From Obrimoposthia wandeli (lineage: Eukaryota), in NCBI GenBank assembly GCA_977020255.1, contig CDROCS010000506.1:186001-250000 (forward strand): 64,000 bases of DNA, in the 5' to 3' direction. This document shows positions 1 through 16,010 of the stretch, piece after piece. Position 1 is the stretch's first letter, and each line of letters begins with the position of its first letter. Under the pieces are notes generated by a model. It was not told where the DNA came from. It saw nothing but the letters and a program-made list of their open reading frames with translations, and did no database searches. The translations under genes were made by a program, and so were the position numbers.

Positions 1-234
1 CTCACAGATCCCAACTCTACATTGTATGGCAATGCTGACAACATGCTTTATCCCAACATAAAAGTGACCCACAAATATAAAGGGTTACAGGCTATGTTTA
101 TCAATCGAATGCACTACCTTCACGATACCCTAGGTTATGATATTTACTTTCCCGAAGATGATCTTGACCGCCCCCCAGCAGAGTTTGTCACGTTACTGCG
201 TCAATTTAAAACACATTGTCCTAGATCAGTGTAA
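1..234 (+). CDS. 3' end of an unidentified protein (runs off window start)
   Basis: Frame open from base 1 to TAA at 232-234; no family motif recognised. Confidence 0.45.
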   Translation, partial: LTDPNSTLYGNADNMLYPNIKVTHKYKGLQAMFINRMHYLHDTLGYDIYFPEDDLDRPPAEFVTLLRQFKTHCPRSV

Positions 235-235
235 A

Positions 236-250
236 TGGTAATAATTATCA
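236..250. promoter_or_regulatory. Fur box (7-1-7)
   Basis: TGGTAAT-A-ATTATCA, one mismatch from TGATAAT-N-ATTATCA, ~90 bp upstream of the 673-aa gene. Confidence 0.75.
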
Positions 251-339: not shown

Positions 340-2361
340 GTGAAAAAGTCTGCCCTTTGCTTTGCCATCTCTTCAGCTTTACTTACTGCTTCATTTGCAT
401 CACATGCTGCAAACGTACAAGTACTTGATAAAACACTTTCTCCTGCTGCAAACTTTCTTGCATATACAGAATTCGAATTATCAGGTGAACCACTTGCTGA
501 ATCTCTTGGTTTAGACCTTGACGTTTTAGACCCTAACCAAGTTGACCAGCCGACTGCATTCGATTATGCCGCTGGTATTGAAAGTTATGAATACTCAGAA
601 GAAGCGATGTATGCGTTAAACTACCAGTCTACGATGGGTCCTCACCTTGTAAATGGTCCAGTAAACCAAGCTCGCGGTGGTTCTCTTGCCGATCTAGGTA
701 AACGTTTCATCTCACTAGCAGGAGCAGTTGGTTTCCCAAGTGAAGAAATTCCATTAAATATGTATCCTATCTCTGTACCATACGTATCAGGTAATCCTGA
801 GTTCGTCGGTAAAGTAGATACAACTAAAGTAAATGGCGAAGAACTAGAAGTATTATCAGCAACAGGTAAAGCAGCAGTTCACAACACCGTAATTCCAGCT
901 TACTTCCGTGACTACAAAACACTCGCATGGGACAGCGCAAGTTTCGATAAAGCCTTAAACCCTGGCGCAATCGGCAGCATCTTCCTTAAAGAAGTCATGT
1001 GGTCACAAGATTTTCTCGGTGGCATGCACGTTACGACGACAGATGAAGAAGTTGAAGCAACATCAAGTACAATGGATCAAGATGGCGTACACAGTCTTGG
1101 TGTATCCGCTGCCGATGGTTTCAACGGTATGATCTTAACTGAAATGTCACTAGATAAGTTACTTATCCTACAACAGCAACTTGGCTTTGACGGTAACAAG
1201 CTAGGCGTTAAATTTGGTCCTGATTATGATGCATCTAAAAAACCTATCTGGTTTGCACATAAAGTCGCTGTTAAAGAAACACAGAAAAACAACGTCAATC
1301 ACATCGGTGAATTATCAGTAACAGATGGTTCTTCGTCATTACGTGATACTTGGATGCTATTGTGGCCAGTAAGTGAATTCTATGCATTTACTGACCAGCG
1401 TACAGCGAACACAGCGCAAAACCCAGCATTCAAAGCTGTGTTTGATGGCAAACCATTTGCTGCAGCACCAAAACAAAATATTGATAACAAGACAAGCAAC
1501 AATGTAATCGCTGACGATGCTTTCTCTGTTGCCAGCAACGTGGCTAACCTGTCGTTCCAAAACTTAGCAAACCTACATTTCAATAAGAAAGCAGGTACGT
1601 TTGTTACTCAATACGACGGCAAGCAAAATGCACAAGTTGAGACATTTGACGCGGCATACAGCATCGTAGCACTATCAATTTACCAACGTTCACAAGATGC
1701 ATTACCAGTAGGTTATGCAGCAGCAGACGGCGGTGATGTAGATTTAGCAACACCTCAAGGTAAACAAGCACTTAGTCTAATCAAAGCCCAAGCAGATTAC
1801 ATCGTTAACACGTTAGTAGCGAAAAATGGTCTCGTATATGACGGCGCCACAATTGGTAAATCAGTAGATAAAAATCAATCACTTGACGCGCAATTCTCTG
1901 CAATTCGTGGCTTAGTTGCTGCTTACCTTGCAACACAAGACGAAAGCTACAAGCAAGCAGCACGTTCAATCTTCCTTGCGGTAGAGAAAAACATGTTTGA
2001 TGCAGAACTAGGTACTTGGGCACAAACGCCAGGTAAAGCAACAATCCACACACCATTAACTGCTGCAGCAATCTCGGGTGGTTTACGTGAAACAATGCTT
2101 CACCTTGCTAACGAAGAAGCCGAGCATGTTCCAGCACTCGAACTACAACACTTAACAGAGCGTTACACTGCTTGGTTCAAGAAAGTAGTAAACGGTGGTC
2201 AACAATTATCAGAATGGGTTGGTGATTCAGGTGAAAACTTACTGAAAGACAACAATACTACCGATTCAGATAATGATGGCGTACACCAAGTAACAGGTGC
2301 AGGTGGTAAATTTGGTACAGCGCAAACGATGGCAGCAAAAGTGTCGGTTAGTGCAAACTAG
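340..2361 (+). CDS. Large secreted acidic protein of unknown function; C-terminal region possibly alpha/alpha-barrel-like
   Basis: 673-aa ORF, GTG start after AAGGA RBS, Sec signal ending ASHA; Asp/Glu-rich; DSDNDG motif; helix segment AIRGLVAAYLATQDESYKQAARSIF recalls six-hairpin/YyaL-type repeats; codon choice looks like a highly expressed gene. Confidence 0.85.
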   Translation: MKKSALCFAISSALLTASFASHAANVQVLDKTLSPAANFLAYTEFELSGEPLAESLGLDLDVLDPNQVDQPTAFDYAAGIESYEYSEEAMYALNYQSTMGPHLVNGPVNQARGGSLADLGKRFISLAGAVGFPSEEIPLNMYPISVPYVSGNPEFVGKVDTTKVNGEELEVLSATGKAAVHNTVIPAYFRDYKTLAWDSASFDKALNPGAIGSIFLKEVMWSQDFLGGMHVTTTDEEVEATSSTMDQDGVHSLGVSAADGFNGMILTEMSLDKLLILQQQLGFDGNKLGVKFGPDYDASKKPIWFAHKVAVKETQKNNVNHIGELSVTDGSSSLRDTWMLLWPVSEFYAFTDQRTANTAQNPAFKAVFDGKPFAAAPKQNIDNKTSNNVIADDAFSVASNVANLSFQNLANLHFNKKAGTFVTQYDGKQNAQVETFDAAYSIVALSIYQRSQDALPVGYAAADGGDVDLATPQGKQALSLIKAQADYIVNTLVAKNGLVYDGATIGKSVDKNQSLDAQFSAIRGLVAAYLATQDESYKQAARSIFLAVEKNMFDAELGTWAQTPGKATIHTPLTAAAISGGLRETMLHLANEEAEHVPALELQHLTERYTAWFKKVVNGGQQLSEWVGDSGENLLKDNNTTDSDNDGVHQVTGAGGKFGTAQTMAAKVSVSAN

Positions 2362-2511: not shown

Positions 2512-2994
2512 ATGTCAATTCAAATAGCTACCTCAACCAGTGATAATGCTTGGTCACGTTTACAAGATCATTTTAAACGTTTAGCCTTTCACCACAAAAA
2601 AGCCGAAGCAATATTATATTTAATGTTCTTATCAGGGCTTTTACTGTGGCCATTTATCAGCATTCCATGGCAAGTAGAACGCACTGTACTGCTCATGCAT
2701 ATGCTTGCTGGTATTAGTATCTTCCCTGCTTTTGTTGGTAGTTTTTGGCTGTCTCATCGAAATCTTATTCAAAAAAGTAACAAGAAATTCTTGCGTCAAA
2801 CTGGCAATGTGATTGAGTACTTACTTGTTACTTGCACTCTGACTGGTGTTTATCTCACTTTTTGGGGAAACACAGGTAATGACTTCAGTATCCTGATGCA
2901 AGATATCCATTTTTACAGCTCATGGTTACTTACCCCGCTTGTTCTTCGCCACGCATGGCGCTGGACTGTCATTAAATTCTTTAGGAAGTCATAA
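2512..2994 (+). CDS. Small multi-pass membrane protein, cytochrome b-like
   Basis: 160 aa, ~4 hydrophobic segments, His pairs in TM helices including H-x13-H (IHFYSSWLLTPLVLRH). Confidence 0.65.
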   Translation: MSIQIATSTSDNAWSRLQDHFKRLAFHHKKAEAILYLMFLSGLLLWPFISIPWQVERTVLLMHMLAGISIFPAFVGSFWLSHRNLIQKSNKKFLRQTGNVIEYLLVTCTLTGVYLTFWGNTGNDFSILMQDIHFYSSWLLTPLVLRHAWRWTVIKFFRKS

Positions 2995-2995
2995 T

Positions 2996-3844
2996 ATGTT
3001 TGCCAGTTTTTTAATTACTTTCCGTGAAGGACTCGAAGCCTTCCTACTTGTAGGCATCATTCTGTCTTACCTCGCCAAGCTTGGTGAATCAAAACACAAC
3101 AAACTTATCTATATTGGAGTGGCGCTGGGTTTAATTGCCTCGTTAATTGTTGCTTTCATTTTCCAGTTTGTAGTCGACCAGTTTGACTCCCATGAATATC
3201 GTAATTTATTAATGGCGGGTATTTTAAGCTTTGCGACTGTCGTCCTTACCTACATGGCAATTTGGATGCAACGCCAGGCTAAAAGCCAAGTAGCAAATAT
3301 GCAGAACAATATCCGTGCAATATTAACCACGGGTAACGTTTTTGGGTTAATCTTTCTGGCCTTCCTAGCTGTGATGCGCGAAGGCTTCGAAACCGTGTTA
3401 TTTTTCTCAGCATTGATGTATTCAGGCCAAGGCGACTTTTCATTACAAGATGGTTTAATTGGCGCAGGCGCCGGTCTTGTTGCATCGCTTGTACTCGTTA
3501 TCGTATTAATGCGTGGTACCCGTAAAGTACCAATCCAAGCATTCTTCAAATGGACTAGCTTGTTAATCATTATTATTGCCGCTGGGCTATTATCTTCAGC
3601 AACCAATATGCTACAGAGCGCCGACGTATTGCCCGTATTCCAAACAGCCGTATTTGATATTAGCCATATCCTTGATGATCAAGGTGTATTTGGCACTTTC
3701 TTACGGGCTTTATTTGGTTATAATTCATCACCAAATCTATTACCACTGCTTGTTTGGATTATTTATTTAGCGGTATTTAGCGTTTTCTGGCAGCGTGGTT
3801 ATCAAACACAGGCCAAACCAACAGCTAATGTAAGTAATACATAG
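2996..3844 (+). CDS. FTR1-family iron permease
   Basis: Two RExxE motifs (FREGLE, MREGFE), ~7 TM; true start ATG 2996 follows AGGAAG RBS and upstream stop (track start 2939 too long). Confidence 0.92.
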   Translation: MFASFLITFREGLEAFLLVGIILSYLAKLGESKHNKLIYIGVALGLIASLIVAFIFQFVVDQFDSHEYRNLLMAGILSFATVVLTYMAIWMQRQAKSQVANMQNNIRAILTTGNVFGLIFLAFLAVMREGFETVLFFSALMYSGQGDFSLQDGLIGAGAGLVASLVLVIVLMRGTRKVPIQAFFKWTSLLIIIIAAGLLSSATNMLQSADVLPVFQTAVFDISHILDDQGVFGTFLRALFGYNSSPNLLPLLVWIIYLAVFSVFWQRGYQTQAKPTANVSNT

Positions 3845-4055: not shown

Positions 4056-5531
4056 ATGTCGAAAAAAATTGTAATTTTAGGCGCAGGTCCAGCTGGACTG
4101 ATGGCCGCATGGGAATTTAATCAAGCTGGCTATGAAGTCACCATCCTAGAACGTGAAGAGTTTGTTGGCGGTATGTGCGCAACCCAAACATTCCAAGGTG
4201 AAAAAGGCGAATACCGTTTTGATTACGGTGGCCATCGCTTTATTACTAAAAATCCGAAACTATTACAGTTTATCGACGATTTAATGACGGATGATCTGCT
4301 TTATGCTGAACGTACCAGTGTGATCCGTTTTAAAGGCCGTACCTACAACTACCCACTCGCGATTGGTAACCTACTGCGTAATGCGCCGATCAGCTTATTA
4401 GCGGGCGCAGCGGTAGATTTAGTATTTAAACTACCTTTCCAAAAACGCCCAAGTGAACAGAGCACCAGTAACTTTGCCGAATGGATTGAAACGCGCTTTG
4501 GTACCACGTTATACAAAAACTTCTTCGAAGGTTACACCGGTAAGCTTTGGGGCATCGACCCACGTCAACTCTCTGCTGACTGGGCATCACAACGTATAAG
4601 CTTGTTAGATTTAAAAGATGTGGCACGAAGATTAATACCCACGCGCGGCGCAACACCTCGTACCTATGCTAAGAAATACCGTTATCCTAAACTCGGCTTT
4701 GGTCAAATGTATACCAAGCTTGCTGAAAAGTTACAGCTGCAAGGCGTAACCATAGTACAAGGTGCGAATATCAGCGCGTTGCAGCAAGGCCATGATCCAC
4801 GTAAACATAATGAGCTTAATAAGAGCAATAGCATTGATGCCGTGACTTATGAGTTTAACGGTGAAACTCATACGATTAGCTGTGATCATGTTGTCGGCAC
4901 AATTCCATTACCTGTGGTTTGTACATTAACAGGGTTCGATTCAGGTCTAACTTATCGTTCACTGCGCTTTTTCAACATGCCAATGGCAACAGAAAATGTG
5001 TCACAGAATACCTGGCAGTACCTGTCCGACCCAGAATTAATCGGCACTCGTTTGCAAGAACCTCGTCGCCGTTCACCCTTCATGGCCCCCGAAGGACAAA
5101 CATCTGTGATGATTGAGATCCCTTGTGACAAAGGTGATGATGTTTGGAACATGGACAACGACAAACTATTAAAACGAGTAAAAGAAGACCTTGATCATTT
5201 AGACGTACCCGATGTCAGTACCGGTGAATACTTTACCACTTACACGGAATACGCTTATCCGATGATGGACGTGCGCTATAACGCCAAACGTGAAGCCGCG
5301 ATTAAACACCTTAACCAATTTGATAATTTGGTCATGACTGGTCGCCAAGGTACTTTCCGTTATATTTTTACTGATACAGCAATGGAAATGGGCTTAATGG
5401 CTGCAGAAGGTATTATTAAAGGTGAAGATAATCGCCGTCAGATCTTTGATCACCGTAACGAAAAAACAGTCATTGAAGTGCAAAGCATTATGGATGATAA
5501 AAAAACACCAGAGGGTAAAAATGTCACTTAA
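4056..5531 (+). CDS. FAD-dependent oxidoreductase, UDP-galactopyranose mutase/HemY-like superfamily
   Basis: GAGPAG dinucleotide fold, DYGGHRF, YAYPM, GRQGTFRY motifs; 491 aa. Confidence 0.8.
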   Translation: MSKKIVILGAGPAGLMAAWEFNQAGYEVTILEREEFVGGMCATQTFQGEKGEYRFDYGGHRFITKNPKLLQFIDDLMTDDLLYAERTSVIRFKGRTYNYPLAIGNLLRNAPISLLAGAAVDLVFKLPFQKRPSEQSTSNFAEWIETRFGTTLYKNFFEGYTGKLWGIDPRQLSADWASQRISLLDLKDVARRLIPTRGATPRTYAKKYRYPKLGFGQMYTKLAEKLQLQGVTIVQGANISALQQGHDPRKHNELNKSNSIDAVTYEFNGETHTISCDHVVGTIPLPVVCTLTGFDSGLTYRSLRFFNMPMATENVSQNTWQYLSDPELIGTRLQEPRRRSPFMAPEGQTSVMIEIPCDKGDDVWNMDNDKLLKRVKEDLDHLDVPDVSTGEYFTTYTEYAYPMMDVRYNAKREAAIKHLNQFDNLVMTGRQGTFRYIFTDTAMEMGLMAAEGIIKGEDNRRQIFDHRNEKTVIEVQSIMDDKKTPEGKNVT

Positions 5532-6159
5532 AGCGACTAATACAACGTTTGTGAAAACAAGCGTAATAAACACCAGCATGATGAAATCATTTATCCTAAG
5601 CTTTTTTGTCTTGCTATTTAGCACACAAAGTTTTGCTTATTCTTATGCTGCAGCAGGTAAAGAACCGTTAATTGAAGGACGAGAAGTGCTATTAAAAGCA
5701 TTATCAACGGATGATTATACCGCTGTACAAGCTGCCTATAATACCATGCAAGCTGAGTTCGTTTACTTCAATGAACACCATGGTTTAAATCTTGATGAAC
5801 AGATGGAAAAAGCCATCTCAAATAAAGACCAGCAAGGTGTAACGGGGGCACTCGTCACCACGATGAAAGCCGAAGTAATGCGCCGCCTTGAAGGTGCAGA
5901 GCAAAACATTAACGATTACCAAGTCGCTAAAGTGTTAGTGGTCAAAAGTAAGTTATTTATTGATTTACTGGCTGCTGATTTGACGGCTGATAATCGCCAG
6001 AAAGCAGATGTAGCGATCCGTGGGGCGCTCGCCTCTATCGGTAACCCAGGGGTATTTGGTGTTGGTCAAAAACCTGCCGATTTAACACGCTTTATTGCCT
6101 TCCGTACTGACTTACAAACGGCACTGCAATTTACATTACCCGATGCACCAACGAAGTAG
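5521..6159 (+). CDS. Secreted all-helical protein of unknown function
   Basis: ATG 5521 after GAGGG RBS overlaps upstream stop (alternative start 5578); signal-like FILSFFVLLFSTQSFA; amphipathic helices. Confidence 0.75.
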   Translation: MSLKATNTTFVKTSVINTSMMKSFILSFFVLLFSTQSFAYSYAAAGKEPLIEGREVLLKALSTDDYTAVQAAYNTMQAEFVYFNEHHGLNLDEQMEKAISNKDQQGVTGALVTTMKAEVMRRLEGAEQNINDYQVAKVLVVKSKLFIDLLAADLTADNRQKADVAIRGALASIGNPGVFGVGQKPADLTRFIAFRTDLQTALQFTLPDAPTK

Positions 6160-7576
6160 TAAGCCTTGCTACGCTGATTTAATTATCGGTATTAGCGTAA
6201 TAGCCTGCATTGCAGGCTATTTTGGCTTACTCAATTATTACAGTTTTGATATTAGCAGTGATGATGCACTGTACTTTCAGCGTGCATTAACTTATTTTTC
6301 GGTATTAGAGTTCAGCCCTCACTTTCCTGGATATCCTGGCTTTGTATGGTTAGAACGCCTTGTCTATGCAATCAGTCAACACCCGAACAGTAATGTATTA
6401 GTCAGTTACTTTTCTGCCATAGCATTAACCTTAAGCGTTTTTGCCTATTGTTATCAGCGCATGCATACCAAGTCATTTGCATTAGTCGCTGTACTGTTGT
6501 TTTTAGTGCAGGGCAATATCGCCGAATTAGCCTTTAACGGTTTGTCTGATGCTTCAGCATTGTGGTTTTTTAGCTTATATTTATTATGCACGCGCTTTGA
6601 TCCACCACCGTTACAAAGACCGACATTCACAGCTACATTTACCACAACATGCACAGCGATTATCAGCGGCTTATTATTGGCGGCATGTTTAGCAACGCGG
6701 CCGTCTTATTTACCTTTAGTTAGCAGCGCGATGCTATTGGCACTCTGTTACCAAGATAAAATCCAATCAAGCTATAAACAACTTGGTTGGCAGATAATCA
6801 GTATTACTGTTATTGGATTTATTTGCGCACTCTATGTGTTTATGCAAGACGGCTGGGCTTATTTTGAAGAAGGTCAACGCTTTACCCAAGGCCATTTTGC
6901 TATTTGGGGCAATACCACAAGGTCCACTGACTCATTACTCAGCCAGTGGCTGACAACATTAACCAATACCTATTCCACTTTCGGGCTGATATTATTAACC
7001 TCAATCCTCGTCATTGGTTTATATATCACCAAAACCCGTGGACTCAGTATTCTAGCCTGTTGCTGGTTAGCTTGGATAATTCGTGGACAAAACCCAGAGA
7101 ACATTCGTCATTTAGCTGTATTGGGCTTATTGCTGCCAATAATCAGCGGGCAGCTACTTGAATATTTTTATCATACCCAGCGCCTTCGCCCCGTCCTTAT
7201 TTTATTCATAGGGGGGTTATTAATAACCTTAAGTAGTCACAGTCTCAAGCAATTTACCGCACAAAAAAATGCACCCGTATTACAAGCGAGTCAGTTCTTA
7301 AATACCATAGAAAAACAACAAATCATCATCAGTAATTATAATATTGATAACCTGCGTAATAATCTGCCCCAGCATGTCGTGTTAGACCGTCATTATCAAA
7401 ACAGCAGTAATTACCAAGCCCAACAGCAAGACTACTGGCGTCTAAGCAGTAATAAGCTAGACTCGAATCCACTGGATAATGAACATTTAGTGGCTCAATT
7501 TAAAGGTCGTTTTCTTGGTGAGCGCAGTTTATACCTCTATTACTTTGATCCTAATCATTTAAGCTCGCAAACATAA
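6143..7576 (+). CDS. Polytopic membrane protein, GT-C/PMT-like glycosyltransferase candidate
   Basis: N-terminal TM followed by acidic loop SSDDALYF...SPHFPGYP, then ~10 TM and a soluble C-terminal tail; start uncertain (6095 TTG or 6143 ATG). Confidence 0.6.
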   Translation: MHQRSSKPCYADLIIGISVIACIAGYFGLLNYYSFDISSDDALYFQRALTYFSVLEFSPHFPGYPGFVWLERLVYAISQHPNSNVLVSYFSAIALTLSVFAYCYQRMHTKSFALVAVLLFLVQGNIAELAFNGLSDASALWFFSLYLLCTRFDPPPLQRPTFTATFTTTCTAIISGLLLAACLATRPSYLPLVSSAMLLALCYQDKIQSSYKQLGWQIISITVIGFICALYVFMQDGWAYFEEGQRFTQGHFAIWGNTTRSTDSLLSQWLTTLTNTYSTFGLILLTSILVIGLYITKTRGLSILACCWLAWIIRGQNPENIRHLAVLGLLLPIISGQLLEYFYHTQRLRPVLILFIGGLLITLSSHSLKQFTAQKNAPVLQASQFLNTIEKQQIIISNYNIDNLRNNLPQHVVLDRHYQNSSNYQAQQQDYWRLSSNKLDSNPLDNEHLVAQFKGRFLGERSLYLYYFDPNHLSSQT

Positions 7577-7585
7577 CTGCAATTA

Positions 7586-7629
7586 TTGCACTATCGCGCC
7601 AAAACTATATAATGATAACCATTCTTAAT
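7586..7629 (+). promoter_or_regulatory. sigma70 promoter with overlapping Fur box for the cytochrome gene
   Basis: TTGCAC (7586-7591)-N16-TATAAT (7608-7613); AATGATAACCATTCTTAAT at 7611-7629. Confidence 0.65.
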
Positions 7630-7667: not shown

Positions 7668-10649
7668 ATGAATATAAAAATGTTGCCTAAATTAATGTTT
7701 ACTTTACTGCTGCTAGTAAGCCAGTCACTTTATGCCAGCACTGTTAATGCCAATGCGGCTGATAGCAATATTGCTCATGCTAAAAGTACTTATGCAAATA
7801 CCAAAAGTAACAGCTTATTACTATCAACTGATAAAACTCAGTTTATTAGTGCAAATATGGATGCAGGCAGTGTCAGTATTCTTGATGCTGAAAGTGGTCA
7901 ATTATTAGCAGAACAAGCATTAGGTAAAGATTTACGCCGTCTGGCACTAGATCCGATTAACAACCAATTATTAGTCAGTGATTATCTGGCAGATCAACTG
8001 TATCTGATTGATGCAAAAACGCTAAAGTTAATTAAAACCATTAAAACAGGTTACCGTCCTTTTGGTATTGTTTATGACGAATATAATAGGCAGTATTACG
8101 TCACTTTATTCGAAGCCAAACAACTATTAACTGTATCGACAGAGGGTGAGATCACAGCAACAACGCCAACAGCAGAGACGCCGCGTGGACTCGCTCTGGC
8201 AGCCGATGGGCGTTTATTTATCACCCACAGCATGACAGGTCAGGTATCAATTTATGATACACGTTCTGCCACGCTGCAATTAAATAAGATAATTCAACTT
8301 GTCGATACGCCAGCGCATGCGTCTCGCGCGGTACCACAAGGTAAACCACGTGTACTCGATAATATTGCGATATCACCCGATGGTACGCAAGCTTGGTTAC
8401 CGCATGTATTGTGGTCATTTTCACAAAATTTTCAATTTCAATCGACAGTCTTCCCCACTATTTCATTACTTGACCTTACACCAGGTAAAGAAAAAGAAAT
8501 GGTTGATAAGCGTAAGCAATTATTTAAGCAAATAAACATTATCGAGAATAACAACACCACACGTATTGTCTCAAATCCACATGATGTTTCATTTCGTGAA
8601 GACGGTAAAAAAGTCTTTATTAGCTTATCTGGATCTGAGGACTTGCTGGTATTCGATTTATCTCGCCAAGCTAAAATAGGTAAAAAGTCTAAACGCCATC
8701 GTCGAACCAAGTTACAAGGCGGCGTGAAAGCCACGCAAATATATCGTCATATTCCAGGCAGTAATCCACGTAGCCTAATTGAAAAAGACGGCACCCTTTA
8801 TGTGCAAAATGCCATGTCGCACGACTTAGTCAGCTTTGATGTCAGTGGCAAAGGGCCTTTTGCTAAAGTTAAACTCGCTAATGCGCAGTTCGCCAAACTG
8901 ATTAATCAAGATCCAATCGCGCCAGAATTACGTTTAGGTAAAACCCTGTTCAATCTTGCCAACAGTGAAAAATTTGAAAACAGCGCCATGGCGGGTGATT
9001 TCTGGATGAGCTGTAATTCTTGTCACCTTGACGGTTTCAATTTTACCAACAAATACCTATTAGCTGACGGCACCAAAGACATTAGCCAAAATGCAATGAC
9101 AGGTCACATTGGATTAGCCAGCATGATTGCTGGCGATCCGATCGAAGCTTATATCGATATGATCCAAAAGACCCAAGGTGGTATGGGCACAGATCCGAAA
9201 AAACCTGAGTTACCAAAAGTCGATCCAAAATCACCATCTGTAGAGATCGTCCGTTTAATGTCAGCATTAAACATGTACGTCACGACCAAAGAGAATTTAC
9301 CTTACCTATCAACTTGGTTACGTTTTGATGACGAGCGCAAGTTCACGCACAAGTCAGAATGGTTAAACTCAGCCAGTTGTGAATCATGCCACAGTACCCT
9401 TTATAAGCAGTGGTCGAACTCAAACCATGGTATGCACATGGATAGCCCTTATTATCGCTTCCAAGAAAACTTAGCGGCTGAATCAGAAGGCGAACCCTTT
9501 AGAAATTTATGCCGTGGTTGTCATGCCCCGCAAACGATATTAAATAACAATACAGCGCCGTTGACTCACCTTAATAGCATGTATGAGAAAGAAGGCCAAA
9601 GCCTACGCGATGCATTAAAACAAGGCTTACCAGTCGACGAAACTGGCACCAGTTGTGTATTCTGTCACCGTATAACCAAAGCTGAAGATGCGGGTGGTAA
9701 TACCGATCTTACCGTTAACTTAAAAGACCGAGCAGAATACCTGTTCGAATTTTCGAGTAACCCGGCATTAAAACTCATTGCCGAAGCACAAATAAATGCA
9801 TCTCCACAGCAGCATAAAGACAGCTATTCAAACCCAGCGCTGTATAAAAGTTCGTTATATTGTGCGACTTGTCATAATGAGTTCACTCCAGGTCAAGGTG
9901 CTAATGTAAATAACAACTATGGCGAATGGCAGGCATCTAAATTTAACGCGCCTGACAACCCAGAACAAAACAAAACCTGTATCGATTGTCACATGCGCTC
10001 TGACATGACTGATTTCGATAACGATGTACCGGGACAGGCAACGGATAACGGGCCTATTAAGCCGAACCTCATTGCCCATAACTTTATTGGCGGTAACTAT
10101 TATTTCTCTGATATGCGTTCGAAAGAACACGGTAAACTTAGCCGTGATATCTTACGTAATGCCCTACTACTTGACGTTGAAAGTAGCGAAGATGGCCGTC
10201 ATATAAACGTGAAAGTAACCAACCATAATACCGGCCATAAAATGCCCGGTGGCGCACGTCGTCAAGTATGGGTTGATCTGGTTGTTACCGACAGTCAAGG
10301 TGTCGAGCGTTTAGTCAGTGGCCAATTGAATGATGGTTATTTACCGAAAGACAGCCGTGTATTTGCGAAGAAAAGCGGCTATATGCATGGCGAACCTGTA
10401 GGACTTAAGTTCTGGCGTGTAGAAAAGATTCTAGCAGATACCCGTATATCACCCGATGAAACGCGTATTGAGACGTTTGCTCTACCAGAAAAACTAAGCT
10501 ATCCAATCACCGTAGTTGCTAAAATTAACTACCGCTCTTTCTCAAAACCGTTAACAAGTAAAGTTCAAGCTGCCTTCCCTGAGCAAAACATTCCTTTTGC
10601 CGATGTGATCGAGCTAAACAAAGTCACTAAAGTGTTCCAACAACACTAA
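7668..10649 (+). CDS. Secreted beta-propeller / multiheme cytochrome c fusion (6 CxxCH)
   Basis: Signal peptide; YVTN-like repeats; CNSCH, CESCH, CRGCH, CVFCH, CATCH, CIDCH; C-terminal region resembles c554/c552-type multiheme domain (GHKMPGG). Confidence 0.88.
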   Translation: MNIKMLPKLMFTLLLLVSQSLYASTVNANAADSNIAHAKSTYANTKSNSLLLSTDKTQFISANMDAGSVSILDAESGQLLAEQALGKDLRRLALDPINNQLLVSDYLADQLYLIDAKTLKLIKTIKTGYRPFGIVYDEYNRQYYVTLFEAKQLLTVSTEGEITATTPTAETPRGLALAADGRLFITHSMTGQVSIYDTRSATLQLNKIIQLVDTPAHASRAVPQGKPRVLDNIAISPDGTQAWLPHVLWSFSQNFQFQSTVFPTISLLDLTPGKEKEMVDKRKQLFKQINIIENNNTTRIVSNPHDVSFREDGKKVFISLSGSEDLLVFDLSRQAKIGKKSKRHRRTKLQGGVKATQIYRHIPGSNPRSLIEKDGTLYVQNAMSHDLVSFDVSGKGPFAKVKLANAQFAKLINQDPIAPELRLGKTLFNLANSEKFENSAMAGDFWMSCNSCHLDGFNFTNKYLLADGTKDISQNAMTGHIGLASMIAGDPIEAYIDMIQKTQGGMGTDPKKPELPKVDPKSPSVEIVRLMSALNMYVTTKENLPYLSTWLRFDDERKFTHKSEWLNSASCESCHSTLYKQWSNSNHGMHMDSPYYRFQENLAAESEGEPFRNLCRGCHAPQTILNNNTAPLTHLNSMYEKEGQSLRDALKQGLPVDETGTSCVFCHRITKAEDAGGNTDLTVNLKDRAEYLFEFSSNPALKLIAEAQINASPQQHKDSYSNPALYKSSLYCATCHNEFTPGQGANVNNNYGEWQASKFNAPDNPEQNKTCIDCHMRSDMTDFDNDVPGQATDNGPIKPNLIAHNFIGGNYYFSDMRSKEHGKLSRDILRNALLLDVESSEDGRHINVKVTNHNTGHKMPGGARRQVWVDLVVTDSQGVERLVSGQLNDGYLPKDSRVFAKKSGYMHGEPVGLKFWRVEKILADTRISPDETRIETFALPEKLSYPITVVAKINYRSFSKPLTSKVQAAFPEQNIPFADVIELNKVTKVFQQH

Positions 10650-10960: not shown

Positions 10961-11596
10961 ATGCATGCATATATAGCTAAACAACCGATTTTAAACAGCG
11001 CTCGCCAAATTGTGGCTTATGAGCTGTTATATCGTGATAGTTTAGATAATACCTTCCCAATGATTAATGCTGAGCTCGCCACCGCGCGCTTAGTTGACGA
11101 GCACTTGTTGAATTCTAATATCAACAAGCTTGTGGACAACAAACCCTACTTCATTAATTTCACCGAGAAGAGCATACTGACTGGCTTACCACTAAAACTG
11201 CTCAACAAACCCATCGTCATTGAAGTATTGGAAGATGTCCCACCAACGCAAGCGATATTTAATGCGTTAACAAAGTTGAAAAGTATGGGGTTTACCATCG
11301 CATTGGATGATTTTATTTATTCTGAAGACTGGCTGCCATTTTTTAGCATTGTCGATATTATCAAATTTGATATTACCCTCACCTCTTTTAAAGAGATAAA
11401 AGCACTAAAGCCATTATTAGACAAACATGAGGTAAGTATATTAGTCGAGAAAATTGAAACGGAGGGGCAATTTACCCAAGCTAAAAACCTGCAAAGTGAA
11501 TATTTTCAAGGTTACTTATTCTCTGAACCAGAGATAGTATTGAATGAAATTAATACGCCGGAGACACAAACAACGCAGATGACAAGCGCACCATAA
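10961..11596 (+). CDS. Stand-alone EAL domain protein (YuxH-type EAL lacking HDOD)
   Basis: IAKQPI, YELLYR, IEVLE, ALDDF, KFD, EKIE, FQGYLF motifs. Confidence 0.85.
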   Translation: MHAYIAKQPILNSARQIVAYELLYRDSLDNTFPMINAELATARLVDEHLLNSNINKLVDNKPYFINFTEKSILTGLPLKLLNKPIVIEVLEDVPPTQAIFNALTKLKSMGFTIALDDFIYSEDWLPFFSIVDIIKFDITLTSFKEIKALKPLLDKHEVSILVEKIETEGQFTQAKNLQSEYFQGYLFSEPEIVLNEINTPETQTTQMTSAP

Positions 11597-13930: not shown

Positions 13931-14042
13931 GATCCCTTTGACCTAATAAGTTTTATAGGAAGCGACTGAACAAGACAGATGAGATATGGCATAAGGCTAT
14001 TTACAAATGATGTATGTAAAGATAACACTTACAACTCTTCTA

Positions 14043-14225
14043 TTTCAGTAGCGCCCCATAGTTAATTTAAAATTGACTATGACAGTGATGTATCTATTCG
14101 AACACATCCCCAGAATGAATACTTTAAGCTGTTAGCATCCGTTCTTCGGCGCAATTCCCTTTCGTATTATTGTCATTGGAGCTACCTAAACAATACTAGT
14201 AATGAGTTGCGCACCTCTACTTAGG
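14043..14225 (-). ncRNA. Lysine riboswitch
   Basis: Minus strand AGTAGAGGTGCG...GAAAGGG...GCCGAA...CTGGG...CGAATA...ACTGTC...GGGGCGCTACT with P1 AGTAG/CTACT. Confidence 0.92.
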
Positions 14226-14642
14226 AGGAAGCCAGATAATAGCAGATAATTTCACCACATCAAGAAATAGTCAGTGTTAATGTTCATAAAACAAACAGCA
14301 AGTGACATTAAAATCTAGCTCAATCATCAGATTATTTTTCGACATAAAGTATATCGACTTCAAATAATAGACCATTAAATAGTTTAAAAAACAATGTTCA
14401 CACTATAGTTGAATTATATTCATTTACTCATCGAATTAATCCCTAATGAGTTCAATTTAATAAATAAATGTAAATACGTTTCTTATATTTATTTAGCTAT
14501 AGTATATTCATTACATTAGAGTATATTATTTACATTATATTTTTCGTATTAAATAGATTCATTACACTAGGTACTTCTTTGTATTAGTGTATTAATCTTA
14601 TTTCGCGTTTACTCGTCCCCTGTCTATATTTAGGTATTAATT

Positions 14643-15050
14643 ATGAATGATTTTATTAAAGTATTTTTAAATGCACGTAGTCTACGCGCTGCAACAAAAG
14701 AATTAAGCGTTGAGCAACTAGAAGAAGTGTTAATTAAATTCACTACAATAGTAGAAGACAGAAAAGAAGCTGAAGCGGCTGACTTAGAAAAACAGCAAGA
14801 AAAGCAAGCTAAAATGACCGAAATATTATTACAACTTAAAGAAAATGGCATTAGCCCTGAAGAATTAATGGGCTTAACTGATGCAACAGCTGAAAAAGCA
14901 AAAGTTAAAACTAAACGTGGCCCTCGCCCTGCAAAATACGCATATGATTTTAATGGCGAAACTAAAACATGGACAGGCCAAGGTCGCATGCCTTTACCAC
15001 TTCAAGAAGTAAAGAATGCTAAAGGTACAATTGAAGAATTCTTAATCTAG
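14643..15050 (+). CDS. hns: H-NS family nucleoid protein
   Basis: LNARSLRA N-terminus, RPAKY and TWTGQGRMP motifs; very AT-rich upstream region. Confidence 0.9.
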   Translation: MNDFIKVFLNARSLRAATKELSVEQLEEVLIKFTTIVEDRKEAEAADLEKQQEKQAKMTEILLQLKENGISPEELMGLTDATAEKAKVKTKRGPRPAKYAYDFNGETKTWTGQGRMPLPLQEVKNAKGTIEEFLI

Positions 15051-15060
15051 AGGGATCTTT

Positions 15061-15486
15061 GTGACACAGTTTATATTACATCCACAACTTTCTGCAGATA
15101 CCGTGCTGTTAGGTGAATTTCCATTATGCCAAGTATTATTGGCTAATGATGGTAATTTCCCCTGGTTAATTTTGGTGCCTAAAGTTAATGGGATTACTGA
15201 ATTTCATGAATTAAGTGATCAGCAACAAGTGCAGTTTTTATCTGAATCTAACGCTGTCAGTAAACTATTAAAAGACGGATTAAGTGCTGACAAGATCAAT
15301 ATTGCAGCCTTAGGTAATATGGTGCCGCAATTACATATCCATCATGTTGCACGCTTTAAAGAAGATGCTTGTTGGCCCAAACCAATTTGGGGTCAAATAC
15401 CAGCAATAATGCGAACAGAGCAACAGACTAAACAATTAATAACGATGATCACAACCAAGCTTCAAGCTGGGTTCATCAAGAAATAA
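15061..15486 (+). CDS. HIT family protein
   Basis: NIAALGNMVPQLHIHHVARF motif. Confidence 0.9.
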   Translation: MTQFILHPQLSADTVLLGEFPLCQVLLANDGNFPWLILVPKVNGITEFHELSDQQQVQFLSESNAVSKLLKDGLSADKINIAALGNMVPQLHIHHVARFKEDACWPKPIWGQIPAIMRTEQQTKQLITMITTKLQAGFIKK

Positions 15487-15717
15487 AATTAGCCTGCTAA
15501 TTAGTCTTATGCGCAGTTCAAATTGTGTTATTTCGAGTGATCGACATTTAACGGCAAGTATCTTTCAATTTGATACTTGCCGTTCTTTCGCTATCCCTCC
15601 CCTAGAGCAATTATCTGTAATCCCGCTATTAATAACTCATCCGCCCACTGCTTACCTATTAATAGATAAACCATTTATTTTAAATTCGCACTTAATAATT
15701 TAAAATAAAGAATAGAA

Positions 15718-15960
15718 CTATTTCCCTTCATTATCCAAATACACTGAAGGTCGTTTCAATAACGGCGCCAACATTGACTCCAGTCCATTTAGCTTAACTT
15801 CGTACATAAGCGCAAGTTGCTGTCCCAGTTTAGAATCAGGAAAACCATTGCTGTGAAACCACACTAAATAAGGTTCTGGTAACTCCAATAATAAACGCCC
15901 ACGATATTTACCAAAGGGCATCACGGTATTAATTGCTTCAATCATTGCTTGTTGTGACAT
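15718..15960 (-). CDS. DUF3820/YpeB-like small protein
   Basis: MPFGKYRGRLLLELPEPYLVWF motif. Confidence 0.85.
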   Translation of the reverse strand: MSQQAMIEAINTVMPFGKYRGRLLLELPEPYLVWFHSNGFPDSKLGQQLALMYEVKLNGLESMLAPLLKRPSVYLDNEGK

Positions 15961-16010
15961 ATTAAATCCAATATTAATTAATGACTTAGTGATTTTTATT
16001 CTCGCGCTAG

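What the first reader, a model, noticed from the sequence alone, without database searches (positions are those of the whole stretch)
7668..10649. Three-part cytochrome: beta-propeller + peroxidase-like monoheme + five-heme c554-like domain
Seen: a ~420-aa propeller-like region; then LGKTLF...MSCNSCHLDG, resembling the first heme of CCP/MauG-type proteins with no second CCP heme; then five more CxxCH and a beta-rich tail. Inference: a periplasmic redox enzyme in which the propeller binds substrate and the heme chain carries electrons, replacing the usual Fet3/EfeB oxidase for FTR1.
Basis: partly seen in the sequence, partly recalled or inferred. Interest (0 to 1): 0.75.

Follow-up and report, generated by a model that had tools for sequence, protein, structure and literature searches.

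The report
Membrane-wired six-haem enzyme for iron uptake
A Moritella gene encodes a secreted propeller protein with six haems. It belongs to an uncharacterised, iron-regulated gene module found in several bacterial phyla, usually next to an FTR1 iron permease, so it is a good candidate for a new redox partner in bacterial iron uptake.

Summary
ORF 7668-10649 (+) encodes a 993-aa secreted protein. It has a YVTN-type beta-propeller, one haem c domain and five more CxxCH sites followed by a beta-sandwich.

Refinements:
- The single-haem domain is a remote but real homologue of the N-terminal (catalytic) haem domain of propeller-fused CCP/MauG-type enzymes.
- The last 430 residues are a full copy of the Thermochromatium tepidum cytochrome c552 fold (5ze8, Z 25.3). 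This is the ExtKL/MccSep pentahaem family, but without its Sec/Cys active site. It is not cytochrome c554 proper.

New findings:
- The closest partner is a 160-aa four-helix protein with four invariant His (DUF4405-like, probably two b haems). It lies next to the gene in 63 of 64 loci and is fused to it in longer homologues.
- The 673-aa protein A accompanies even distant relatives, including a Bacillota one behind a 17/19 Fur box.
- FTR1 lies within 10 kb in 44 of 64 loci.
- Fur-box-like sites are strongly enriched upstream of the cluster genes.

Best reading: a Fur-controlled, membrane-wired haem redox enzyme for iron acquisition, most likely the ferroxidase partner of FTR1. The direction of electron flow is untested.

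First readers of this scan had already noted the seven-gene Fur/FTR1 cluster on this same stretch (s1-241103).

The parts
231..249 (+). Fur-box-like site (15/19 to GATAATGATAATCATTATC), about 90 nt upstream of gene A and overlapping a promoter-like -10
   Evidence: This is one of only two sites of 15/19 or better in the 64-kb window.
340..2361 (+). Gene A: 673-aa secreted acidic protein (pI 4.8), no Pfam family. It is a conserved partner of the cytochrome even in distant relatives.
   Evidence: Atlas features are nearest to DUF4856-named clusters (a lead only).
2512..2994 (+). Gene B: 160-aa four-helix membrane protein with four invariant His (H63, H82, H133, H147). Probably a di-haem b cytochrome (DUF4405-like) and the membrane anchor and electron gate of the cytochrome.
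   Evidence: fusion, invariant His; Atlas DUF4405, 0.91; next to C in 63 of 64 loci; DUF4405 binds haem b
2996..3844 (+). FTR1/EfeU-family iron permease with two REXXE motifs. The ORF lister starts it at TTG 2939; the probable start is ATG 2996, one base after the stop of B.
   Evidence: PF03239, E 1.4e-45; EfeU NF041756, E 6e-61, below its cut-off
4056..5531 (+). Gene D: cytoplasmic FAD-dependent oxidoreductase (amine-oxidase/UGM-like, PRK07208 type)
   Evidence: It always travels with E and G.
5578..6159 (+). Gene E: small secreted helical protein of about 190 aa, no family (probable start; the ORF lister gives 5422)
6095..7576 (+). Gene G: polytopic membrane protein of about 490 aa, no family
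7608..7626 (+). Second Fur-box-like site (15/19), about 60 nt upstream of the cytochrome gene. It is kept at the same place in five other Moritella genomes.
   Evidence: L004-L008 at -58 to -60
7668..7739 (+). Signal peptide of the cytochrome (aa 1 to about 24)
   Evidence: read directly from the sequence. In fused homologues this segment is a transmembrane linker that follows domain B.
7776..8879 (+). YVTN/YncE-type beta-propeller, probably seven blades (aa ~37-404), pI 9.4. It has invariant H187 and H246 and a conserved Lys/Arg-rich loop at aa 335-350.
8880..9347 (+). Single-haem domain (aa 405-560; CxxCH at C449; invariant H480). It is homologous to the N-terminal haem domain of propeller-fused CCP/MauG-type di-haem enzymes.
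9348..10139 (+). Helical cap of a c552/ExtKL-type pentahaem module (aa 561-824) with five CxxCH. Five further conserved His (H561, H587, H716, H804, H857) are candidate distal ligands.
10140..10649 (+). Ig-like beta-sandwich stem of the pentahaem module (aa 825-993, plus the stop codon). The conserved loop GHxxPGGA has Ala where MccSep has selenocysteine.

Best explanation
The protein (C) is the periplasmic working subunit of a Fur-controlled module A-B-C that serves iron acquisition.

Shown by sequence, fold and context:
- C consists of a signal peptide, a YVTN propeller, one CCP/MauG-type haem domain, and a c552-type pentahaem module with an Ig-like stem.
- B, a four-helix membrane protein with four invariant His, is encoded beside C almost everywhere and is fused to its N terminus in long homologues.
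- A travels with C even in distant relatives.
- FTR1 plus genes D, E and G lie adjacent in about two thirds of loci.
- Fur-box-like sites sit upstream.

Inferred:
- B carries two b haems and links C to the quinone pool or to the cytoplasmic side.
- The five c552-type haems are bis-His electron wires.
- The propeller plus the CCP-type haem 1, together with A, form the catalytic end.

The mechanism I commit to: Fe2+ is oxidised at that catalytic end. Its electrons are consumed by H2O2/O2 at haem 1 or leave through the haem wire and B to the membrane. The Fe3+ is handed to FTR1. In role, C would then stand where EfeB, Fet3 or FtrB stand, and B where FtrD stands.

I put about 0.75 on a role in iron redox for uptake and about 0.4 on the ferroxidase direction specifically.
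For: Architecture:
- Domains.
- 5ze8 match: Foldseek E 7e-15; VIA Z 25.3, 340 aa aligned, rmsd 3.4; profile E 8.8e-13.
- CCP-type origin of haem 1: plus weak fold matches to MauG (Z 4.9) and YhjA (Z 4.3).

B:
- Fusion, BLASTP E 7e-24.
- Four invariant His at the ends of helices 2 and 4.
- DUF4405-like by Atlas features. DUF4405 was shown to bind haem b.

Context in 64 well-flanked loci:
- B 63, A 53, FTR1 44, D-E-G 51.
- The gene order differs between Gamma- and Alphaproteobacteria and Campylobacterota.

Iron control:
- The only two Fur-box-like sites of 15/19 or better in the window lie upstream of A and C.
- In 80 loci, 31 of 43 sites fall in the 12.5% of bases upstream of cluster genes, binomial p 4e-19.
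- A 17/19 Fur box lies before the A plus propeller-CCP pair in a Bacillota contig.
- Ferritin and Bfd genes lie next to another distant pair.

Ferroxidase direction (from established knowledge of these families):
- FTR1 partners described so far include a candidate oxidising component (Fet3, EfeB, FtrB). C is the only periplasmic redox protein in the cluster.
- In CCP, MauG and hydrazine synthase gamma, the N-terminal haem is the one that reacts with a small oxidant.
Against: - No experiment and no RNA data exist for any member.
- FTR1 is absent within 10 kb in 20 of 64 loci. A-B-C operons stand alone among unrelated genes, so C does not strictly need a neighbouring FTR1.
- Relatives of B (MsrQ, PepSY/FoxB, DUF4405) are described as carrying electrons outwards, which fits a reductase.
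- The closest solved fold, T. tepidum c552, is a low-potential cytochrome.
- Six conserved extra His could make all six haems six-coordinate, leaving no open catalytic haem.
- Fur-box-like matches are AT-rich and the loci are related, so the enrichment p-value is inflated.
- No iron-binding site was identified on the propeller or on A.
Confidence: 0.4

Rival explanations
1. Periplasmic ferric reductase. Electrons flow outwards from quinol or a cytoplasmic donor, through the b haems of B and the five-haem wire, to haem 1 and the propeller. There Fe(III) chelates are reduced, possibly presented by A. The Fe2+ is then taken up by FTR1, Feo or another route. This resembles the yeast Fre plus Ftr1 logic or bacterial FoxB.
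For: - B resembles DUF4405/MsrQ/PepSY-type transmembrane cytochromes, which feed periplasmic reductions.
- The pentahaem module is closest to a low-potential cytochrome.
- A-B-C occurs without FTR1, so its product could serve any Fe2+ importer.
- The carriers are largely marine, where iron is mostly complexed Fe(III) (general knowledge).
Against: - FTR1-type permeases are described with oxidising, not reducing, partners, and the cluster holds no other oxidase candidate.
- Outer-sphere ferric reduction would not need a conserved CCP-type haem domain and propeller, yet these are kept across phyla.
Confidence: 0.25
2. Quinol-linked peroxidase. Like E. coli YhjA or quinol peroxidase, the complex reduces H2O2 at the CCP-type haem with electrons from the membrane. 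This would protect the periplasm from Fenton chemistry while Fe2+ is imported.
For: - Haem 1 is homologous to the peroxidatic domain of the CCP family.
- Weak fold matches to MauG (Z 4.9) and YhjA (Z 4.3).
- The link to the membrane through B.
Against: - The typical CCP motifs after the haem site (PRN.T, HW) that are present in the distant relatives are not kept in this family.
- Peroxide defence is usually under OxyR or PerR control rather than Fur.
- This reading does not explain the conserved partner A or the FTR1 adjacency.
Confidence: 0.1
3. MauG/MbnH-like maturation enzyme. C oxidatively modifies protein A to create a metal-binding or redox cofactor, and A is the real iron-handling protein.
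For: - A is paired with the propeller-CCP-type gene in all three informative distant loci.
- The best fold match of haem domain 1 is MauG.
- From memory: MbnH/MbnP is a precedent for a MauG-like enzyme in a metal-uptake operon.
Against: A one-off modification would not need five extra haems and a membrane cytochrome, which point to sustained electron flow.
Confidence: 0.1
4. Respiratory or sulfur-cycle multihaem enzyme: MccSep-like polysulfide reductase, cd1-type nitrite reductase, or extracellular electron transfer, unrelated to iron nutrition.
For: - NCBIfam ExtKL match at E 1.5e-12 and Pfam Cytochrom_D1 and MtrC-domain matches.
- The fold is shared with c552, which has been suggested to act in sulfur metabolism.
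Against: - There is no free cysteine at all, so neither the haem-ligating Cys nor the Sec/Cys of MccSep can exist.
- The ExtKL score is far below its cut-off (46.8 against 250).
- No outer-membrane porin or respiratory genes are in the cluster.
- Fur boxes and FTR1 or ferritin neighbours point to iron.
Confidence: 0.05

Closest known systems
Thermochromatium tepidum pentahaem cytochrome c552 (PDB 5ze8) and the pentahaem cytochrome (PHC) family
   Same: Residues 561-990 superpose on the whole chain (Z 25.3, 340 aa, 22% identity). The profile match is E 8.8e-13. Both have five CxxCH in a helical cap plus an Ig-like stem, and the GH..P.GA loop with Ala at the Sec position.
   Different: c552 is a free-standing protein of about 400 aa with no assigned function. 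Here the module is the C-terminal part of a 993-aa enzyme, following a propeller and a sixth haem.
MccSep / ExtKL polysulfide reductase of Geobacter (PMC13510729; PDB 9wt8/9wt9)
   Same: Same pentahaem cap plus Ig-like stem. The loop TN..GH..P.G aligns. NCBIfam ExtKL matches at E 1.5e-12.
   Different: Sec325 is replaced by Ala. The haem-ligating Cys239 is absent, and the protein has no free Cys at all. The score is far below the family cut-off. The context is iron uptake, not sulfur respiration.
Bacterial di-haem cytochrome c peroxidase / MauG family, including propeller-fused forms (hydrazine synthase beta-gamma-like) and the quinol peroxidase YhjA
   Same: The propeller plus first haem domain are homologous to propeller-CCP_MauG proteins (P0141: E 5e-76, 31% identity over aa 48-576). 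The LGK.LF...W.SC.SCH.DG motif is shared. Like YhjA, the enzyme is tied to the membrane.
   Different: The second (electron-transfer) haem domain of CCP is replaced by a pentahaem module. The Pfam CCP_MauG score is sub-threshold. The motifs that follow the haem site have diverged.
EfeUOB (EfeB haem peroxidase + EfeO + EfeU)
   Same: An FTR1/EfeU-family permease, Fur control, and a periplasmic haem protein as the only redox candidate. A could stand where EfeO stands (inference).
   Different: EfeB is a DyP-type b-haem peroxidase exported by Tat. There is no DyP, cupredoxin or M75 domain here. This system adds a haem wire and a membrane cytochrome.
FtrABCD of Bordetella/Brucella (P19, cupredoxin FtrB, FTR1 permease FtrC, polyferredoxin FtrD)
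   Same: The logic of a periplasmic oxidant plus a membrane electron-transfer protein beside an FTR1 permease (from memory).
   Different: It uses copper and iron-sulfur proteins instead of c and b haems, and none of its non-permease parts is homologous to these. A distant clade of this propeller-multihaem family does sit beside two cupredoxin genes.
DUF4405 / MsrQ / PepSY-FoxB transmembrane di-haem cytochromes
   Same: B has four invariant His at the two ends of two helices. Its Atlas features are nearest to DUF4405 clusters. DUF4405 was shown to bind haem b.
   Different: There is no Pfam DUF4405 hit. B has four helices, against the six described for DUF4405. Its partner is a multihaem c protein, not a flavinylated protein.
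Nitrosomonas cytochrome c554
   Same: Pfam PF13435 (Cytochrome_C554) matches aa 571-623 above its cut-off.
   Different: c554 has four haems and no Ig-like stem. The profile against 1bvb gives only E 0.49. The fold search puts 5ze8 far ahead of everything else.

Membership tests
c552-type pentahaem cytochrome (PHC family: 5ze8, ExtKL, Gsu2801) | Five CxxCH in a helical cap followed by an Ig-like beta-sandwich stem | tested here: met
   VIA Z 25.3 over 340 aa against the whole of 5ze8; Foldseek E 7e-15; profile E 8.8e-13
MccSep (ExtKL) polysulfide reductase | Conserved Sec or Cys in the Ig-domain loop (GHSIPDGU) | tested here: not met
   The loop reads GHKMPGGA, with Ala at that place
MccSep (ExtKL) polysulfide reductase | His/Cys-ligated active-site haem 2 (Cys239) | tested here: not met
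   All 12 Cys are inside CxxCH motifs, so none is free to ligate a haem
Di-haem CCP / MauG (PF03150) | N-terminal haem domain with the LG..LF...SC.SCH signature | tested here: inconclusive
   Directly sub-threshold (E 0.024, 15.7 bits against 25.6). Homology is shown through intermediates: P0141 hits CCP_MauG at 37.3 bits and aligns with this protein at E 5e-76; 19 of 36 distant relatives hit CCP_MauG.
Di-haem CCP / MauG (PF03150) | Second, His/Met electron-transfer haem domain (TAPY.HDGS region) | tested here: not met
   This domain is absent. A pentahaem module starts where relatives have the second CxxCH.
Hydrazine synthase beta-gamma | Propeller plus di-haem gamma part, with a third covalent Cys bond to haem gamma-I | tested here: not met
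   Only the propeller matches NF052342 (aa 49-352, E 4e-4, 18.6 bits against 1250). There is no free Cys. The feature is described in PMC12758564.
Cytochrome cd1 nitrite reductase | Eight-bladed d1-haem propeller with an N-terminal c haem | tested here: inconclusive
   Pfam Cytochrom_D1 scores 29.3 bits but covers only aa 37-200, and YVTN/YncE/lactonase 7-blade models match as well or better. The domain order is reversed. Blade number and d1 ligands could not be checked because no propeller model was made.
Cytochrome c554 | Tetrahaem c554 fold | tested here: not met
   1bvb at E 0.49; no c554 among the fold matches. The Pfam PF13435 hit reflects a generic haem-pair motif.
FTR1-linked iron uptake systems (EfeUOB, FtrABCD, Fet3-Ftr1 type) | Genomic linkage of the redox partner to an FTR1 permease | tested here: met
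   FTR1 lies within 10 kb in 44 of 64 well-flanked loci, in four gene orders and several classes. It is not obligate: 20 of 64 loci lack it.
FTR1-linked iron uptake systems (EfeUOB, FtrABCD, Fet3-Ftr1 type) | Ferroxidase activity of the partner and iron-dependent expression | not testable with these tools
   Only Fur-box-like sites could be scored. No RNA runs were found.
DUF4405-type di-haem b cytochrome (for partner B) | Four conserved His placed to ligate two b haems across the membrane | tested here: met
   H63 and H82 on helix 2 and H133 and H147 on helix 4 are invariant in 14 sequences. Atlas similarity is 0.91. There is no Pfam hit, so family membership itself remains a lead.

The most novel reading that the evidence does not exclude
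A plus the propeller-CCP-type haem protein form an undescribed, Fur-regulated iron-handling enzyme pair shared by Proteobacteria, Campylobacterota and Bacillota. In Proteobacteria the pair has been rewired, through a c552-type pentahaem module and a DUF4405-like b cytochrome, to the membrane's electron pool and teamed with FTR1. This would be a haem-only counterpart of the copper- or DyP-based ferroxidase partners known so far.
Probability: 0.5. Interest if true: 0.8.

Novelty: new variant of a known kind. Interest (0 to 1): 0.68.

Why it matters
FTR1-type permeases are thought to need a redox partner. The partners known so far use copper (Fet3, FtrB, P19/FetP) or a DyP peroxidase (EfeB).

This cluster has none of those. 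Instead it offers an eight-haem chain (six c, probably two b) plus two or more proteins of unknown family. It occurs in at least 270 species-level genomes, including Aeromonas, Photobacterium, Vibrio, Endozoicomonas, Magnetospirillum and Arcobacter relatives.

If confirmed, this would have three consequences:
- It would add a new class of iron-uptake machinery.
- It would give a first function to the T. tepidum c552-type fold outside sulfur respiration.
- It would give a physiological partner to a DUF4405-like membrane cytochrome.

Several carriers are genetically tractable, so the idea can be tested directly.

Tried and rejected
- **Fur consensus search.** A search allowing up to 3 mismatches found nothing. 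A full scoring scan then found the two 15/19 sites.
- **Middle domain, first attempts.**
  - The PDB profile search gave nothing significant; the best cytochrome hit was TsdBA at E 0.44.
  - Foldseek on the domain model gave nothing below E 5.
  - The word-based protein search restricted to that domain returned only fragments of the same family.
  - Only the exhaustive profile search resolved its origin.
- **VIA fold matches of the middle domain.** These are weak (Z at most 4.9) and are used only as concordant evidence.
- **Literature.** Searches for FTR1 with multihaem or propeller terms, with Aeromonas/Fur, with FtrABCD/EfeUOB/FetMP and for DUF4856 found no description of this family or cluster. 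The library lacks most subscription journals.
- **Expression.** No RNA sequencing run holds the gene.
- **P0086.** The look-up found no contig.
- **P0153.** Its contigs are cut at the gene start and say nothing about an upstream A.
- **Readings rejected.** MccSep-like chemistry, c554 and cd1 nitrite reductase; see the membership tests.
- **Not done.**
Full report
**Observation**

The ORF 7668..10649 (+) is real and encodes 993 residues. It opens with a Sec-type signal peptide. It holds six CxxCH motifs, at C449, C571, C615, C663, C732 and C771. These motifs account for all 12 cysteines and are invariant in 48 homologues down to 45% identity. The organism is a Moritella: the best genome match is M. 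dasanensis ArB 0140 at 97%. The family is large. The word search gave 302 proteins with E <= 0.001 among the 8,000 candidates scored, and 270 species-level genomes encode a relative. The sources call these proteins multihaem cytochrome, cytochrome D1 domain protein or YncE family protein. I found no functional study.

**Anatomy**

*Residues ~37-404: propeller.* This is a YVTN/YncE-type propeller. The evidence is 1l0q at E 2.3e-20, the YVTN repeat model above its cut-off, and 7-blade YncE and lactonase models. It is basic (pI 9.4). It carries invariant H187 and H246 and a conserved Lys/Arg-rich loop at 335-350.

*Residues 405-560: single-haem helical domain.*
Pfam CCP_MauG gave E 0.024, below threshold, and covered only the LGK.LF...SC.SCH stretch. 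The PDB profile search and Foldseek gave nothing.
- VIA-align put the N-terminal domain of MauG first (Z 4.9, 100 aa). YhjA, SoxAX, TsdA and hydrazine synthase gamma followed, all at low Z.
- The exhaustive profile search settled it. Beyond the own family it finds many proteins of 650-740 aa. Of 36 of these, 19 hit CCP_MauG (best 2e-12), 27 hit RoxA-like_Cyt-c and 17 hit the lactonase-type 7-blade propeller.
- One of them, P0141 (668 aa), aligns with the Moritella protein at E 5e-76 and 31% identity over residues 48-576. That span covers the propeller plus the haem domain, up to the place where P0141 has its second CxxCH.
- A shape search of the Atlas gives the same neighbours.
- So the propeller and haem 1 together are homologous to propeller-fused CCP/MauG-type di-haem enzymes. 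This is the architecture also known from hydrazine synthase beta-gamma fusions. Haem 1 corresponds to their N-terminal, substrate-reactive haem.

*Residues 561-993: pentahaem module.*
- This part is not a cytochrome c554 fold. It is a complete copy of the T. tepidum pentahaem cytochrome c552 fold: Foldseek E 7e-15; VIA Z 25.3, 340 residues, rmsd 3.4, with the next hits at Z 11 or less; profile E 8.8e-13.
- That fold is a helical five-haem cap on an Ig-like stem. It is shared with ExtKL/MccSep.
- MccSep's defining Sec (loop GHSIPDGU) is Ala here (GHKMPGGA), and its haem-ligating Cys cannot exist because no cysteine is free.
- Six further conserved His (H480, H561, H587, H716, H804, H857) would allow bis-His ligation of all six haems. 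This is an inference.

**Partners**

I label the genes as follows: A = 340-2361, B = 2512-2994, F = FTR1, D = FAD protein, E and G = two unknowns, C = the cytochrome.

The seven genes recur in Photobacterium in the same order. They are rearranged on both strands in Poseidonibacter, a member of Campylobacterota. In an alphaproteobacterial type the order is A-BC-F-D-E-G.

In that last type, C is about 180 residues longer, and the extension is B: BLASTP E 7e-24, and the 11 long homologues that I aligned all carry it. Of the 120 listed homologues, 23 are 1,088-1,173 aa long.

B has four invariant His at the two ends of helices 2 and 4, with H133 and H147 14 residues apart. By Atlas features it is nearest to DUF4405 clusters (0.91). 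DUF4405 has been shown to bind haem b through four central His, like MsrQ and PepSY/FoxB.

Among 64 loci with at least 9 kb on each side:

| Gene order | Loci |
|---|---|
| ABFDEGC | 22 |
| ABCFDEG | 13 |
| ABC | 9 |
| BCFDEG (Aeromonas) | 7 |
| ABCDEG | 7 |
| BC | 4 |
| rearranged | 2 |

| Gene(s) near C | Loci of 64 |
|---|---|
| B | 63 |
| A | 53 |
| D-E-G | 51 |
| FTR1 | 44 |

F never occurs without D-E-G. A-B-C-only operons sit among unrelated genes.

**Iron control**

The window has only two sites matching the Fur consensus at 15/19 or better. One is at 231-249, before A. The other is at 7608-7626, before C. Shuffles give a mean of 0.43 such sites. The second site is kept in five other Moritella genomes.

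Over 80 loci, 31 of 43 such sites lie in the 12.5% of bases upstream of cluster genes (p 4e-19). The caveats are AT-rich intergenic DNA and relatedness of the loci. The sites occur before A or B in Vibrio, Aliivibrio, Photobacterium, Endozoicomonas, A-B-C-only loci, Arcobacter and some Alphaproteobacteria.

**Distant relatives**

- In a spore-former contig (L087), the gene just upstream of the propeller-CCP protein P0141 encodes a clear homologue of A (41% identity, E 5e-163). A 17/19 Fur box lies about 70 nt before it, in a divergent promoter region shared with an ArsP_1/DUF1980 permease pair.
- Two more distant pairs also have an A homologue directly upstream: L089 at E 9e-29 and L090 at E 6e-30, next to ferritin and Bfd genes.
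- A still more distant propeller-multihaem clade sits behind two cupredoxin genes.

The conserved core is therefore A plus the propeller-with-CCP-type-haem unit, under iron control. What varies is the wiring: one more CCP haem in the 650-740-aa relatives such as the Bacillota P0141, or a pentahaem module plus B in Proteobacteria.

**Mechanism**

*Shown:* the architecture, the fusion with B, the linkage, and the Fur-like sites.

*Inferred:* B holds two b haems and exchanges electrons with the quinone pool or the cytoplasmic side. The five c552-type haems are a wire. Haem 1 with the propeller, working with A, is the reactive end.

Sustained wiring to the membrane argues for turnover chemistry rather than a one-off modification.

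I favour a ferroxidase role for FTR1 (about 0.4). Fe2+ would be oxidised at the reactive end. Its electrons would be used on H2O2/O2 at haem 1 or drained through the wire and B. There are two reasons for this choice:
- FTR1 systems described so far include a candidate oxidising component, and C is the only periplasmic redox candidate here.
- In CCP-family enzymes the N-terminal haem is the one that meets a small oxidant.

A ferric reductase with outward electron flow is nearly as plausible (0.25). It fits the relatives of B, the low-potential c552 and the FTR1-less operons. Quinol peroxidase and MauG-like maturation of A are lesser options. Sulfur or nitrogen respiration is disfavoured.

**Comparison and novelty**

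Each fold is known. What I found undescribed in the library searched is the combination: propeller plus half a CCP plus a c552 module, with a DUF4405-like anchor and protein A, in a Fur/FTR1 setting. I rate it a new variant of a known kind, namely redox-assisted FTR1-type iron uptake.

The scan's first readers had already flagged the seven-gene Fur/FTR1 cluster on this same stretch (s1-241103). I tested and extended that reading independently.

Noticed in passing
window 4056-7576: Genes D (cytoplasmic FAD amine-oxidase/UGM-like, NF005547 E 3e-173), E (~190-aa secreted) and G (~490-aa polytopic) always travel together. FTR1 never occurs without them in the loci examined, while D-E-G can occur without FTR1 (7 loci). 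Their role is unknown.
   Followed up: partly
L087 3818-5769 (minus strand) and 5953-5971: In the Bacillota contig, the 17/19 Fur box sits in a divergent region between the A plus propeller-CCP pair and an ArsP_1 (PF03773) plus DUF1980 permease pair. That pair may be the metal importer that replaces FTR1 there.
   Followed up: no
L086 445-1833: A distant clade of propeller-multihaem proteins (P0133, 959 aa) is preceded by two cupredoxin-like genes, the kind of partner seen in FtrABCD.
   Followed up: no
L090 3204-5623: Ferritin, Bfd-type ferredoxin, a small CxxCH lipoprotein-like gene and a 271-aa possible beta-barrel precede an A-like gene and a propeller-CCP-like gene.
   Followed up: partly
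window 10961-11596: A 211-aa stand-alone EAL-domain protein (PF00563, E 5.5e-11) lies directly downstream of the cytochrome gene. It matches only the C-terminal part of the EAL profile.
   Followed up: no
window 14643-15050: A 135-aa ORF lies in the lowest-GC stretch of the window (0.34 at 14001-16000). By eye it looks like an H-NS-type nucleoid protein; I ran no search on it.
   Followed up: no
L084 1449-2729: A group II intron reverse transcriptase (RVT_1 + GIIM) lies about 5 kb upstream of an A-B-C-only operon in a Pseudoalteromonas MAG.
   Followed up: no
L058 and L068 (Terasakiella sp. LRMN1 chromosome): The same chromosome carries two copies of the ABCDEG cluster, about 500 kb apart, with identical hit coordinates. 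This is a recent duplication or an assembly repeat.
   Followed up: no
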